A DNA stretch of 62,982 bases, the filler included, from Octopus bimaculoides (taxonomy: Eukaryota), in NCBI RefSeq assembly GCF_001194135.2. It is 8 parts of 7 records of this genome, joined end to end, with 100 filler letters (N's around TTAATTAATTAA, not from the genome) between each part and the next. Parts side by side here need not be neighbours in the genome. Positions count along the whole stretch, not along the records: positions 52,351 to 55,671 come from NW_026359314.1; 7 more parts are not named here. The stretch is one strand, 5' to 3'. Of the stretch, positions 52,467 to 54,305 are shown piece by piece. The notes beneath the pieces are model-generated. The model did not search any database and was not told where the DNA came from. It saw only the letters and a program-made list of their open reading frames with translations. Each line of letters begins with the position of its first letter. Positions within the stretch are counted from its first letter, which is position 1. The position numbers and the translations under genes are program-made.

Positions 52467-52892
52467 TTGCTCCTGTGGATTGCCGTGATCACGTGCTGTT
52501 GTAACGTCCGGGGAGGGGAATCCGTCACCATTGTAGGCCACCTGTTCATCGCTTCGTTCAAAGCTCCTCGGGCACGGAGTGCCGTGTTCGTGACGAACGA
52601 CTCGCTCGTGGACGCCAGCGAATCGAAGCCGGTGTCCAACACCACGTGCAAGACCATCGTGCGGCGGTCTTATAACGAGGCGCGGTACCCGAAAGTCGTT
52701 TACCACGTCCAGTGTGATTTTAATAGAAGTTCGCAGGATGAGTGCGACCAATCGACCAAAAATGTGCATATGCTGTTCAAGAAGAACTGTGAGAAGAACA
52801 TTTGCTCCTACGATGTTGAAGTAAACCCTATACAGACGGCTTGTGTTAAAAAACGGAGCGCAGACGAAAGACAAAAAGAAGGGAAAATAGTT
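52467..52892 (+). CDS. Coding exon of secreted IL-17-like / cystine-knot-type protein: signal-peptide h-region, pro-segment, domain 1 and KKR linker
   Basis: Polypyrimidine tract plus ttgcag acceptor at 52461-52466; 142 open codons (LLLWIAVITCCCNVRG...CKTIVRRSYNEARYPKVVYHVQC...CSYDVEVNPIQTACVKKRS); phase-0 donor GTT|gtaagt at 52893; RYP..V...C motif as in the IL-17 family. Confidence 0.85.
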
Positions 52893-52946
52893 GTAAGTAT
52901 TCGGTTGTTCTTTTTTTTTTTTTTTTGATTTTTGTTTATACATTGG

Positions 52947-53591
52947 TTGGCTGGCACTCCGTCGGTTACGACGACGAGGGTTCCAGTTGATCCGATCAAC
53001 GGAACAGCCTGCTCGTGAAATTAACGTGCAAGTGGCTGAGCGCTCCGCAGACACGTGTACCCTTAANNNNNNNNNNNNNNNNNNNNNNNNNNNNNNNNNN
53101 NNNNNNNNNNNNNNNNNNNNNNNNNNNNNNNNNNNNNNNNNNNNNNNNNNNNNNNNNNNNNNNNNNNNNNNNNNNNNNNNNNNNNNNNNNNNNNNNNNNN
53201 NNNNNNNNNNNNNNNNNNNNNNNNNNNNNNNNNNNNNNNNNNNNNNNNNNNNNNNNNNNNNNNNNNNNNNNNNNNNNNNNNNNNNNNNNNNNNNNNNNNN
53301 NNTACCCTTAACGTAGTTCTCGGGGGGGGGGATATTCAGCGTGACACAGAGTGTGACAAGGCTGACCCTTTGAATTACAGGTACAACAGACAGAAACAGG
53401 AAGTCAGAGTGAGAGAAAGTTGTGATGAAAGAGTACAGCAGGGTTCGCCACCACCAACCCCTGCCGGAGCCTCGTGGAGCTTTTAGGTGTTTTCGCTCAA
53501 TAAACCCTCACAACGCTCGATCTGGGATTCGAAACGGCGATCCTATGACCGCGAGTCCGCTGCCCTAACCACTGGGCCATTGCGCCTCCAC
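52947..53591 (-). mobile_element. SINE family C, antisense in the intron of the IL-17-like gene
   Basis: Reverse complement of the 60411 copy; internal N gap has overlapping flanks (taccctta). Confidence 0.9.
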
Positions 53592-54016
53592 GAAGCATTG
53601 GGTATGATAAAAAAAAGCAAAACATATGAACAAAAATCGTTTTAGCTGTTGTCGGTAATGCTTTTAACCCTGGGCCAGTCTTGATCCACCAGACCTATGA
53701 CCAACGATGTTCCAGCTCTTATGAATCCTCTTTGATTTAAACATCGTGTATCTACGGCTACATTATCTAAGGTTCCCCTCGTTGTCGTTGTTGTTTAGCG
53801 CTAATGCAGTCCTGATCCAGCAGACCCATGACCAAAGACATTCCAGTGATGACCATCCTAACAAGAATTATCTTATCCAACATGATCCTGTTTGTTGTTG
53901 TTGCTATCATCATTATCATTGTTGTTGTTGTTGTTGTTGTTGTTCTTGGTGGTATTTGAAATTGTTGTTTTTGTTGCAAACAATTAATTTTCTTTTTTTC
54001 TTTTTTCGATTTGCAG

Positions 54017-54305
54017 AAATTCTCAAGAGATGTTTTGTTATTCTTCAACAAGAAAGCAAAAGATGATGGCTTGGAACCAACCGGTGAAGACGAAGCGAAT
54101 AGGTTCGCCGAATGCCAATGGGATTGGGTTCGGCACGTCGACGATAACCGCTTCCCGCGGGTCTTCGAAAGAGCCGTCTGCAAAGACAACGAACGCTGCA
54201 AACCTGTATTCAAGGAGATCGTCATGTTTGTTAAACGCCCTGAACATGGTTGTATTGGAGAATATTGCAATTACGAACCACATATCTACAATGAACCGGT
54301 GGCTT
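54017..54305 (+). CDS. Next coding exon: IL-17-like domain 2, 3' end lost in assembly gap
   Basis: T-rich tract plus ttgcag acceptor at 54011-54016, phase 0, matching the upstream donor; CQWDWVRHVDDNRFPRVFERAVC..CKPV...C resembles IL-17 CPW...D.NR(Y/F)P....A.C...C.P; runs into N gap at 54306. Confidence 0.85.

What the first reader, a model, noticed from the sequence alone, without database searches (positions are those of the whole stretch)
52467..54305. Secreted protein with two tandem IL-17-like cystine-knot-type domains
Two exons join in phase 0 across a canonical GT-AG intron. They encode a hydrophobic signal segment and two homologous domains with matching Cys frameworks: C-x21-C-x9-C-x14-C-x4-C-x12-C and C-x21-C-x5-C-x17-C-x4-C-x12-[T.. 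codon cut by the gap]. Both carry the IL-17/trunk-type R(Y/F)P motif. IL-17, PTTH/trunk and spaetzle family ligands normally have one such domain per chain, and IL-17 works as a dimer. A tandem could therefore be a single-chain pseudo-heterodimer. IL-17-like genes are known to be expanded in octopus. Whether this two-domain form has been described cannot be checked here.
Basis: partly seen in the sequence, partly recalled or inferred. Interest (0 to 1): 0.85.

Follow-up and report, generated by a model that had tools for sequence, protein, structure and literature searches.

The report
Octopus protein with two IL-17 domains
This octopus gene really does encode a secreted-type protein made of two different interleukin-17-like domains in one chain, conserved across cephalopods, which may be a natural "pre-assembled" cytokine heterodimer, although that mode of action is still untested.

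Summary
The piece is a 3321-bp unplaced Octopus bimaculoides scaffold carrying LOC106882237, annotated "uncharacterized protein, partial". Exon 52467-52892 and exon 54017-54305 join in phase 0 across GTAAGT...TTTGCAG. The first assembly gap lies inside an intronic repeat and is spurious: its flanks overlap by 9 bp. The second gap hides only Cys-Val-Leu-Lys-stop.

The same two-domain protein occurs in O. vulgaris (89% identity) and Argonauta hians (47%). It also occurs in unnamed SRA and ENA samples, where one spliced, polyadenylated transcript spans the same junction.

Pfam IL17 passes its threshold with two matched stretches in every full-length member. The two domains are homologous at profile level (hhalign E 6e-6, six Cys aligned). 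Each has closer single-domain relatives than its partner, so this is a fusion of two diverged IL-17 paralogues. Both exons are under purifying selection (dN/dS 0.25 and 0.01).

Not shown: the fold (AlphaFold pLDDT 34 and 43), the start codon (probably an unseen 5' mini-exon), an octopus transcript, and the single-chain pseudo-heterodimer idea. Literature held here mentions multi-IL-17-domain models only for sea urchin. Verdict: real, a new variant of a known kind.

The parts
52448..52466 (+). Pyrimidine tract plus 3' splice acceptor (ttcttcttctcgttgcag) in front of exon A. It implies an unseen upstream exon that carries the start codon.
   Evidence: Sequence. The same acceptor position is found in O. 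vulgaris and in the O. bimaculoides paralogue. In the paralogue and in Argonauta a mini first exon (MMTMSRNK|gt, MTTSRPQ|gt) is spliced to this position.
52467..52892 (+). Exon A (142 codons, phase 0 at both ends). It holds the hydrophobic leader remnant LLLWIAVITCCCNVRG (52467-52514), an N-terminal strand region (FIASFK) and IL-17-like domain 1.
   Evidence: dN/dS against O. vulgaris is 0.25.
52647..52844 (+). Domain 1 cysteine framework C-x21-C-x9-C-x14-C-x4-C-x12-C with the motif NEARYPKVVYHVQC. There are three N-x-S/T sequons: NDS just upstream of this span, and NTT (partly upstream) and NRS.
   Evidence: Direct count on the translation. All Cys are invariant in the alignments. In P0001 the Pfam IL17 match covers profile positions 6-78 of 81.
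52893..54016 (+). Intron, GTAAGT ... TTTGCAG. The true length is about 879 nt, because the gap is spurious.
   Evidence: Colinear intron remnants in O. vulgaris.
52954..53591 (.). Dispersed repeat element inserted in the intron. It contains assembly gap 1 (53067-53302), whose flanks overlap by 9 bp (TACCCTTAA).
   Evidence: At least 8 partial or complete copies lie in 64 kb of O. vulgaris sequence, and four intact copies bridge the gap position without extra sequence. No tRNA was detected.
54017..54305 (+). Exon B (96 codons plus the first base of a Cys codon), cut by gap 2. It encodes a complete IL-17-like chain: an N-terminal strand region (DVLLFFNKK) and domain 2, C-x21-C-x5-C-x17-C-x4-C-x12-[C], with the motif DDNRFPRVFERAVC.
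   Evidence: The alignment to IL-17A runs from its N-terminal strand to the first knot Cys. dN/dS is 0.01. O. vulgaris continues TGC GTT TTG AAA TGA.
54306..55150 (.). Assembly gap 2 (845 N; about 770 bp in O. vulgaris). It hides the last four codons (C-V-L-K), the stop codon and the start of the 3' UTR.
55151..55671 (.). 3' flank: (TA/TG)n and (ATC)n microsatellites and non-coding sequence, orthologous to O. vulgaris sequence about 0.76-1.3 kb past the stop codon.

Best explanation
The piece carries most of a cephalopod gene (O. bimaculoides LOC106882237). Its product is a secreted-type protein of about 240 residues made of two complete, mutually divergent IL-17-like chains fused head to tail. 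Each chain has its own N-terminal strand segment, an R-[YF]-P motif and a six-cysteine framework. Shown, probability about 0.9.

The fusion joined two already-diverged IL-17 paralogues and is old. It is shared by Octopus, Argonauta and at least three further unnamed samples. Shown.

The most likely way it works is inferred, at probability about 0.45 to 0.5. The two domains pair with each other inside one chain, in the way two IL-17 protomers pair in a dimer. This would give an obligate 1:1 heterodimer with two non-equivalent receptor-binding faces, which would engage IL-17 receptor chains in a fixed asymmetric stoichiometry. Domain 2 is almost frozen in sequence and domain 1 evolves about 20 times faster, which suggests one conserved face and one adaptable face.

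The start codon probably lies in a small 5' exon outside the scaffold. Inferred.
For: Identity and join: The scaffold length and the NCBI models match. Orthologues cover 100% of the joined query. Exon maps show the same two coding exons about 1.2-3 kb apart in O. vulgaris, Argonauta and an ENA assembly.

Transcript evidence in relatives: The two-domain CDS is uninterrupted on contigs of 1158-1500 nt. One of them has a poly(A) tail. An intron-retaining contig diverges at exactly codon 140 and continues GTCAGT.

IL-17 nature: Pfam IL17 scores 26.8-35.4 bits against a cut-off of 24, with two stretches, in the four full-length proteins; the window's joined product scores 24.5. Searches of solved structures with the profiles return IL-17A: only IL-17A for the full-length and D2 profiles (E 0.02-0.06), and mainly IL-17A for the D1 profile (E 0.06-0.5, behind one unrelated top hit). 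Most of the 30 best Foldseek hits are IL-17A, F or E.

Internal homology: hhalign gives probability 85% and E 6.3e-6.

Hetero-fusion: D1-like single-domain proteins score 34-41 bits with the D1 profile and 3-17 with the D2 profile. D2-like proteins score 39-50 with D2 and 17 with D1.

Selection: There are 24 synonymous and 1 non-synonymous difference in exon B, and 28 and 29 in exon A.

Pairing (weak, indirect): Each domain has an even number of Cys (six). The segment between the last Cys of D1 and the first Cys of D2 is 41-48 residues, about the same as the mature N-terminal segment of D1. There is therefore no long spacer. In IL-17A/F the N-terminal strand packs on the partner protomer (from my knowledge of the IL-17F and IL-17A structures, not tested here).
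Against: - No confident structure: AlphaFold gave mean pLDDT 34.3 and 43.0, so neither the fold nor intramolecular pairing is shown.
- The Foldseek matches are not significant (E >= 0.28, TM about 0.4).
- Each window domain alone is below the Pfam cut-off (14.1 and 19.6 bits).
- The C-terminal strand has one Cys where canonical IL-17 has C-x-C, so the disulfide connectivity is unknown.
- Octopod linkers carry KKR or RKRR just after domain 1, which could be a convertase cleavage site.
- No transcript from Octopus itself was found in the protein collections (the clusters contain genome-derived models and one MetaClust/UniParc entry, P0005, of unstated origin, but none from a run assembly).
- The start codon is missing, and 52467 is TTG where O. 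vulgaris has ATG.
Confidence: 0.5

Rival explanations
1. Processed precursor. The chain is cleaved by a furin or prohormone-convertase-type protease at the basic site right after domain 1. One outcome would be two separate IL-17-like chains made in 1:1 amounts that then form a non-covalent heterodimer. The other would be that domain 1 acts as a pro-domain or chaperone and the highly conserved domain 2 is the active ligand, which homodimerises.
For: The linker reads CVKKRS in both Octopus species and CVRKRRE in Argonauta (a full R-x-K/R-R motif). Constraint is strongly asymmetric (dN/dS 0.25 for exon A against 0.01 for exon B). This resembles the pro-domain versus mature-ligand pattern of NGF, TGF-beta and Spaetzle (general knowledge).
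Against: The basic motif is absent at the same place in the other clade (P0016 CLKVQKPQKNV, P0020 CVKVQPNGQPNMSR). Basic residues after the last Cys are also seen in single-domain relatives (P0015 ACIKSRK), so they may be structural. Domain 1 keeps all six Cys and the IL-17 motif in every species, which is more than a pro-peptide needs.
Confidence: 0.2
2. Intermolecular pairing. The two domains do not pair with each other within a chain but with domains of a second chain (D1 with D1' and D2 with D2', or head-to-tail D1 with D2'). This would give a dimer or chain of tandem proteins that presents four receptor sites and clusters receptors.
For: IL-17 family ligands work as dimers (PMC9477748, abstract listed; general knowledge). 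Nothing in the data distinguishes intra- from inter-chain pairing. The short linker could favour domain swapping.
Against: There is no odd cysteine for an inter-chain disulfide: six conserved Cys per domain. The fusion of two different paralogues is easier to explain if they pair with each other. There is no direct evidence either way.
Confidence: 0.2
3. Artefact. Two neighbouring single-domain IL-17 genes, or two unrelated contigs joined across the gap, have been wrongly merged into one model.
For: IL-17 genes lie in tandem arrays in O. bimaculoides (PMC8353272). A gap sits between the exons. Intron-retaining contigs that would encode domain 1 only exist in relatives (P0010, P0021, P0022). 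Read-through in the window adds only 12 codons before a stop.
Against: Exon B starts at an acceptor and has no ATG or leader. Exon A ends at a conserved GTAAGT with its frame still open. The gap flanks belong to one repeat copy, and the whole piece is colinear with O. vulgaris. A spliced polyadenylated two-domain transcript exists in a relative. The arrangement is conserved in at least five taxa.
Confidence: 0.03
4. Decaying copy. The O. bimaculoides gene is a pseudogene or is losing function, because the ATG used in the O. vulgaris model is TTG here and NCBI can only model it as partial.
For: 52467-52469 is TTG, against ATG in O. vulgaris and in the paralogue. XP_014788327.2 is partial and starts at an internal Met. 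No octopus transcript was found in the collections.
Against: Both exons have open frames and conserved splice signals, and purifying selection is strong. Argonauta has AAC at this codon and uses an upstream mini-exon, as does the O. bimaculoides paralogue. The codon is therefore probably internal, and the true start lies off the 3.3-kb scaffold.
Confidence: 0.05

Closest known systems
Interleukin-17 family ligands (Pfam PF06083; human IL-17A/F; invertebrate IL-17s of oyster, mussel, sea urchin)
   Same: The Pfam IL17 match is above threshold. Both domains carry motif 1 (D-x-N-R-[YF]-P...C). Domain 2 aligns with IL-17A from the N-terminal strand (NFPRTVMVNLN / KFSRDVLLFFN) to the first knot Cys. 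There are six Cys per domain, as in the invertebrate IL-17s said to keep a third disulfide (PMC4517768). The protein has a secretory-type leader. It belongs to a lineage with a documented IL-17 expansion (PMC8353272).
   Different: There are two domains per chain instead of one. The C-terminal strand has a single Cys (VAC-V) instead of C-x-C. Sequence similarity to vertebrate IL-17 is marginal (E about 0.02-0.06 against PDB sequences). Dimerisation and receptor use are unknown.
IL-17A/IL-17F heterodimer (two gene products, disulfide-linked, binding IL-17RA and IL-17RC)
   Same: It would work like this if the two domains pair: two non-identical IL-17 protomers giving two different receptor-binding faces.
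   Different: Here the two protomers are encoded in one chain, so the stoichiometry is fixed genetically. No spare Cys for an inter-protomer disulfide is evident. The pairing itself is not demonstrated.
Multi-IL-17-domain gene models noted in sea urchin (S. purpuratus SPU_022838.1 with two different IL-17 domains; SPU_019350.1 with three repeated ones; PMC4517768)
   Same: More than one IL-17 superfamily domain is predicted in one protein. SPU_022838.1 also has two dissimilar domains.
   Different: Those models were mentioned in one sentence as exceptions among gene models, without transcript or cross-species support. Their relationship to the cephalopod proteins was not tested here, and the whole-library profile search did not retrieve them.
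Argiope bruennichi KAF8783219.1 (P0013, 336 aa, two IL-17 stretches, Pfam 66.5 bits)
   Same: It has two IL-17 domains in one predicted chain, and the domains are of the D1-like class.
   Different: Its two repeats are nearly identical, which points to a recent duplication or a fused model of adjacent genes. The last Cys of repeat 1 is replaced at the joint (VAYA|SPLEC), which suggests a model artefact. It is not orthologous to the cephalopod fusion.
Engineered single-chain cystine-knot dimers (e.g. single-chain gonadotropins or VEGF; from general knowledge, not checked here)
   Same: The concept is the same: two knot protomers tethered head to tail to force a defined dimer.
   Different: Those are artificial constructs. 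This would be a natural, conserved example in the IL-17 family.

Membership tests
IL-17 family (Pfam PF06083) | Profile match at or above Pfam's gathering score (24 bits) | tested here: met
   The window's joined product scores 24.5 bits with 2 stretches. D1 alone scores 14.1 and D2 alone 19.6. The full-length members score higher, each with 2 stretches: P0001 30.7, P0002 35.4, P0016 26.8, P0020 27.8.
IL-17 family (Pfam PF06083) | Motif 1, x-D-x-N-R-[IYF]-P-x-x-[IL]-x-E-A-[RK]-C, in front of the first knot cysteine (PMC4517768) | tested here: met
   D2 reads HVDDNRFPRVFERAVC. D1 reads SYNEARYPKVVYHVQC, which is looser. Both are invariant or nearly so across species.
IL-17 family (Pfam PF06083) | Knot cysteines: two in strand 2 (C-x4/5-C) and C-x-C in strand 4 | tested here: inconclusive
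   D2 has AVC-x5-C, which matches. D1 has VQC-x9-C. Both end with a single Cys (TAC-V, VAC-V) instead of C-x-C, and both have an extra C-x4-C pair. Single-domain relatives that pass Pfam (P0015, 28.7 bits) also end with one Cys, whereas P0011 has C-V-C. Disulfide connectivity cannot be derived here.
IL-17 family (Pfam PF06083) | Secretory signal peptide | tested here: inconclusive
   A hydrophobic segment LLLWIAVITCCC lies at the start of exon A, but the piece holds no ATG. Full-length relatives have typical leaders (P0016 MCHQKIMLVWLLLLSLTIRSLNG; P0009 MMTMSRNKMILLLTLITWCC). No signal-peptide predictor was available.
IL-17 family (Pfam PF06083) | IL-17 fold (two beta-hairpins tied by the knot) | tested here: inconclusive
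   AlphaFold gave pLDDT 34.3 and 43.0. The second model shows two short and two long strands per domain. The Foldseek top hits are IL-17A/F/E, but with E >= 0.28 and TM about 0.4.
IL-17 family (Pfam PF06083) | Acts as a dimer through IL-17 receptors (SEFIR signalling) | not testable with these tools
   Needs protein biochemistry.
Natural single-chain (tandem) knot pseudo-heterodimer | Two homologous ligand domains encoded in one ORF and one mature mRNA | tested here: met
   hhalign of D1 against D2 gives E 6.3e-6. A spliced polyadenylated transcript in a relative carries both domains. The architecture is conserved in at least five taxa. No Octopus transcript was examined.
Natural single-chain (tandem) knot pseudo-heterodimer | Domains stay covalently linked in the mature protein | not testable with these tools
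   A KKR or RKRR motif lies in octopod linkers and is absent in P0016 and P0020.
Natural single-chain (tandem) knot pseudo-heterodimer | Intramolecular pairing of the two domains in IL-17-dimer geometry | tested here: inconclusive
   Both AlphaFold models have too low confidence to read inter-domain contacts (pTM 0.28).

The most novel reading that the evidence does not exclude
Cephalopods carry a natural single-chain IL-17 heterodimer. Two anciently diverged IL-17 paralogues were fused into one polypeptide and fold onto each other. This gives a monomeric cytokine with two genetically fixed, non-equivalent receptor-binding faces: one nearly frozen (domain 2, dN/dS 0.01) and one fast-evolving (domain 1). 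The fusion has been maintained since before the Octopus-Argonauta split, and probably since before the split from the lineage of the unnamed samples.
Probability: 0.4. Interest if true: 0.7.

Novelty: new variant of a known kind. Interest (0 to 1): 0.55.

Why it matters
IL-17 cytokines signal as dimers, and whether a homo- or heterodimer forms decides which receptor chains are brought together.

A conserved natural fusion of two different IL-17 protomers would be a genetic solution to forcing one defined heterodimer. It would give structural biologists a ready-made asymmetric ligand for studying how invertebrate IL-17 receptors assemble. It would also give evolutionary immunologists a marker for how the large cephalopod IL-17 expansion diversified.

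The contrast between a nearly invariant domain 2 and a fast-evolving domain 1 suggests a division of labour that can be tested.

The gene is so far only an "uncharacterized" or "hypothetical" protein in the databases. No paper in the held library describes the architecture in cephalopods.

If the protein turns out to be cleaved or to pair between chains, it remains an unusual IL-17 precursor, but a less remarkable one.

Tried and rejected
- **BLASTP of the window's domain 1 against domain 2:** not significant (E 8.6). Homology shows up only with profiles.
- **AlphaFold, run twice.** Full-length P0001 with 4 sequences gave pLDDT 34.3. Mature P0001 with 7 sequences gave pLDDT 43.0. Both are too poor to judge the fold or domain packing. 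Foldseek on the second model was dominated by IL-17A/F but was not significant.
- **Third homologue search with a broad alignment (A5):** it returned fewer proteins than the second search (4 against 9), so no deeper alignment could be built.
- **Exact look-up of P0001:** failed, because only the longer isoform P0004 is indexed.
- **Search for the 5' mini-exon in the 10 kb upstream of the O. vulgaris gene:** nothing found. This neither supports nor excludes it, since the mini-exon lies 10.4 kb upstream in Argonauta.
- **Domain-2 exon downstream of the O. bimaculoides paralogue:** none found, but 5.5 kb of the 10 kb is N.
- **Organism of SRR6517992, ERR3431203, SRR24189505 and ERZ21867824:** not found in the paper library, so the "other clade" is unnamed.
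- **tRNA scan of the intronic repeat:** negative.
- **Rfam hits** (mir-297, mir-466, snoZ247 and others): they fall on microsatellites and were rejected as low-complexity artefacts.
- **Antisense ORFs** (for example 52428-53054, 208 aa): rejected as coding. The substitution pattern (24 synonymous against 1 non-synonymous in the + frame of exon B) identifies the + frame as the coding one.
- **In-frame upstream ATG at 52380:** rejected as a start codon. It lies in a CA microsatellite and pyrimidine tract directly in front of a conserved acceptor.
- **Literature searches for this locus or for tandem IL-17 in cephalopods:** nothing found.
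Full report
**What the piece is**

Places 52351-55671 are 3321 bases long. The cluster look-up shows that a protein identical to part of the window's product is XP_014788327.2, [quoted passage not shown], seen on a contig of exactly 3321 bases.

**Checking the observation**

Exon A (52467-52892) translates to 142 codons. It begins with a hydrophobic stretch, LLLWIAVITCCCNVRG. Exon B (54017-54304) gives 96 codons and then a lone T before the second gap.

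- The donor is GTAAGT at 52893.
- The acceptor is a long pyrimidine tract followed by TTTGCAG, ending at 54016.
- Both junctions are phase 0, and both signals are conserved at the orthologous O. vulgaris positions.

- Domain 1: C-x21-C-x9-C-x14-C-x4-C-x12-C.
- Domain 2: C-x21-C-x5-C-x17-C-x4-C-x12-[T..].

In O. vulgaris the cut codon is TGC (Cys), followed by Val-Leu-Lys-stop. The sixth cysteine therefore exists, and the second gap hides only four codons plus untranslated sequence.

**The gap that had to be tested first (53067-53302)**

This gap lies in the intron, inside a dispersed repeat (52954-53591). That repeat has many copies in 64 kb of O. vulgaris sequence. The bases on the two sides of the gap both carry TACCCTTAA, and intact copies read ...GTGTACCCTTAACGTAGTTCTCGG... 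straight through. The gap is an assembly artefact with a 9-bp overlap. Nothing coding is missing, and being intronic it cannot affect the frame.

The order exon A, intron remnants, exon B, 3' flank is colinear with O. vulgaris over the whole piece. This excludes a chimeric join.

**Is it one gene?**

- A search of 5.8 billion proteins with the joined product found two clusters, both covering 100% of the query: O. vulgaris CAI9744326.1 (242 aa, 89% identity) and Argonauta hians GAB1611163.1 (260 aa, 47%).
- tblastn maps show the same two coding exons 1.2 kb apart in O. vulgaris and 3 kb apart in Argonauta.
- A full scan of 1.84 billion representatives with the family profile added a 218/248-aa two-domain protein (P0007, P0016). 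The second word-index search added a 241-aa one (P0020).
- These lie on SRA-run assemblies only 1158-1500 nt long, with an uninterrupted CDS, so they are spliced mRNAs.
- Contig L006 ends in a poly(A) run. It is identical for 420 nt to contig L007 from another run, then diverges at exactly codon 140. There L007 continues GTCAGT..., a retained intron at the same phase-0 position between the domains.
- A genomic copy in an ENA assembly has the two exons 1.7 kb apart.

The "separate genes" and "misjoin" readings are therefore very unlikely. I could not examine a transcript from Octopus itself, because the octopus clusters contain no sequence from a run assembly (genome-derived models plus one entry, P0005, of unstated origin).

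**The 5' end**

Exon A starts right after an acceptor (ttgcag) and has no ATG. Its first codon, TTG, aligns with ATG in O. vulgaris, with ATG in an O. bimaculoides paralogue (XP_052834324.1), and with AAC in Argonauta.

In the paralogue and in Argonauta a mini first exon is spliced to this same position from 3.7 and 10.4 kb upstream. It reads MMTMSRNK|gt in the paralogue and MTTSRPQ|gt in Argonauta. The most economical reading is a three-exon gene whose first exon lies off this short scaffold. I found no such exon in the 10 kb upstream in O. vulgaris, so this remains an inference.

**Is it IL-17-like, and are both halves?**

- On the window's product, Pfam IL17 is the only family hit: domain 1 14.1 bits, domain 2 19.6 bits, joined 24.5 bits, against a cut-off of 24.
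- All four full-length family members pass with two matched stretches (26.8-35.4 bits). In the octopod proteins the better stretch is domain 1, covering profile positions 6-78 of 81.
- Profiles of the whole protein and of domain 2, searched against all PDB sequences, return only IL-17A (E 0.02-0.06). The domain 1 profile returns IL-17A for most of its better hits (E 0.06-0.5), behind one unrelated top hit. Exon B aligns with IL-17A from its N-terminal strand (NFPRTVMVNLN / KFSRDVLLFFN) to the first knot cysteine. Exon B thus encodes a whole IL-17-type chain, not just a knot.
- The two domains are homologous at profile level: hhalign probability 85%, E 6.3e-6, 72 columns, all six Cys in register.
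- They are not recent duplicates. Eight single-domain IL-17-like proteins score 34-41 bits with the domain 1 profile and only 3-17 with domain 2. Two others score 39-50 with domain 2 and 17 with domain 1. The protein is therefore a fusion of two already-diverged IL-17 paralogues.

One departure from canonical IL-17 is that each domain ends with a single Cys (TAC-V, VAC-V) instead of C-x-C, and carries an extra C-x4-C pair. Six cysteines per domain is in line with the extra disulfide reported for invertebrate IL-17s (PMC4517768), but the connectivity is unknown.

**Structure**

Two AlphaFold runs failed to give a usable model: pLDDT 34.3 with four sequences and 43.0 with seven. The second model has two short and two long strands per domain. 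Its best Foldseek matches in the PDB are almost all IL-17A, F or E, but at E >= 0.28 and TM about 0.4. That is consistent with IL-17 but not evidence for it.

**Selection**

Window against O. vulgaris:

| Exon | Synonymous differences | Non-synonymous differences | dN/dS |
|---|---|---|---|
| A | 28 | 29 | 0.25 |
| B | 24 | 1 | 0.01 |

Both halves are constrained coding sequence in the + frame. Domain 2 is almost frozen, while domain 1 changes about twenty times faster at the protein level. All twelve domain cysteines are invariant from Octopus to Argonauta.

**How it most likely works**

Shown: a conserved, transcribed gene for a leader-bearing chain of two different IL-17-like units, with about 41-48 residues between the last Cys of unit 1 and the first Cys of unit 2. 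That is about the length of unit 1's own mature N-terminal segment, so there is no long spacer.

Inferred: the two units pair within the chain as IL-17 protomers pair in a dimer. This would give an obligate asymmetric ligand with one conserved and one adaptable receptor face. I put this at roughly 0.45-0.5.

Rivals:

- **Cleavage at the basic site after unit 1 (0.2).** The site is KKR in Octopus and RKRR in Argonauta, but it is absent in P0016 and P0020. Cleavage would give two chains, or a pro-domain plus the active domain 2.
- **Pairing between chains (0.2).**
- **Decaying copy (0.05).**
- **Annotation or assembly artefact (0.03).**

**Comparison with what is known**

IL-17 expansion in O. 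bimaculoides (31-36 genes, in tandem arrays) is documented (PMC8353272). In the held literature the only mention of more than one IL-17 domain per protein is a sentence on two sea-urchin gene models (SPU_022838.1 and SPU_019350.1; PMC4517768). Searches for this locus, its accessions, or tandem or single-chain IL-17 found nothing else.

A spider model (Argiope bruennichi KAF8783219.1) has two near-identical IL-17 repeats, but it looks like a recent duplication or a fused model.

The family found here is small: 11 representatives at E <= 0.001 out of 1.84 billion. I therefore rate it a new variant of a known kind. It is IL-17-like at the Pfam level, with an undescribed, conserved hetero-tandem architecture.

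**Verdict**

The architectural interpretation is supported. The pseudo-heterodimer mechanism is plausible and untested. Interest 0.55.

Noticed in passing
window 52954-53591 (gap 53067-53302 inside): A dispersed repeat of about 390 bp is inserted in the intron. It has many copies on both strands in 64 kb of O. vulgaris sequence (87-95% identity) but is absent from the orthologous O. vulgaris intron. The assembly gap inside it is spurious, with TACCCTTAA duplicated on both flanks. ARAGORN finds no tRNA-like part.
   Followed up: partly
window 53663-53859; L002 23210-24076 and 58082-58701: Part of the intron resembles a tandem satellite with a period of about 126 bp that forms arrays elsewhere in the O. 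vulgaris locus (69-78% identity, many staggered hits).
   Followed up: no
window 55151-55345 and 55389-55464: (TA/TG)n and (ATC)n microsatellites give spurious Rfam hits. The mir-297 hit has E 4e-8 but is far below its gathering score. The snoZ247 hit scores 39.4 bits, just above its gathering score of 38, and lies on the ATC repeat. Both are low-complexity artefacts.
   Followed up: yes
window 54299-54305; L002 11926-11944 and 54537-54689: The O. vulgaris annotation carries a second isoform (CAI9744325.1, 287 aa). It uses a cryptic donor inside the last strand of domain 2 (CCG|GTGGCT, also present in the window) and splices to an exon 43 kb downstream that encodes a Gly-rich tail. This removes the sixth Cys of domain 2. 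It is probably a model artefact or a minor isoform.
   Followed up: partly
L004 (O. bimaculoides LGKD02130388.1) 8132-12260: The paralogue LOC128251557 (XP_052834324.1, partial) has the mini first exon and a domain-1-type exon that ends in a GTAAGT donor. It has lost the C-x4-C cysteine pair (YRDDFVPY). No domain-2 exon is visible downstream, but more than half of that sequence is N.
   Followed up: partly
L007 (ERR3431203) and proteins P0010, P0021, P0022: Several run-assembly contigs of the relatives retain the inter-domain intron. They would encode domain 1 followed by a hydrophobic read-through tail. In the window, read-through would add VSIRLFFFFFF and then a stop at 52926-52928. These could be unspliced pre-mRNA or a domain-1-only isoform.
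   Followed up: partly
P0013 (Argiope bruennichi KAF8783219.1): A spider gene model has two almost identical IL-17 repeats (Pfam 66.5 bits, 2 stretches). At the joint the last Cys of repeat 1 is replaced (VAYA|SPLEC), which suggests either a fused model of adjacent genes or an independent tandem IL-17.
   Followed up: no
window 52467-52514 and O. vulgaris/paralogue equivalents: The leader of the octopus proteins contains a run of three cysteines (CCC; WCC in the paralogue). This is unusual for a signal peptide core. It is presumably removed with the leader.
   Followed up: no
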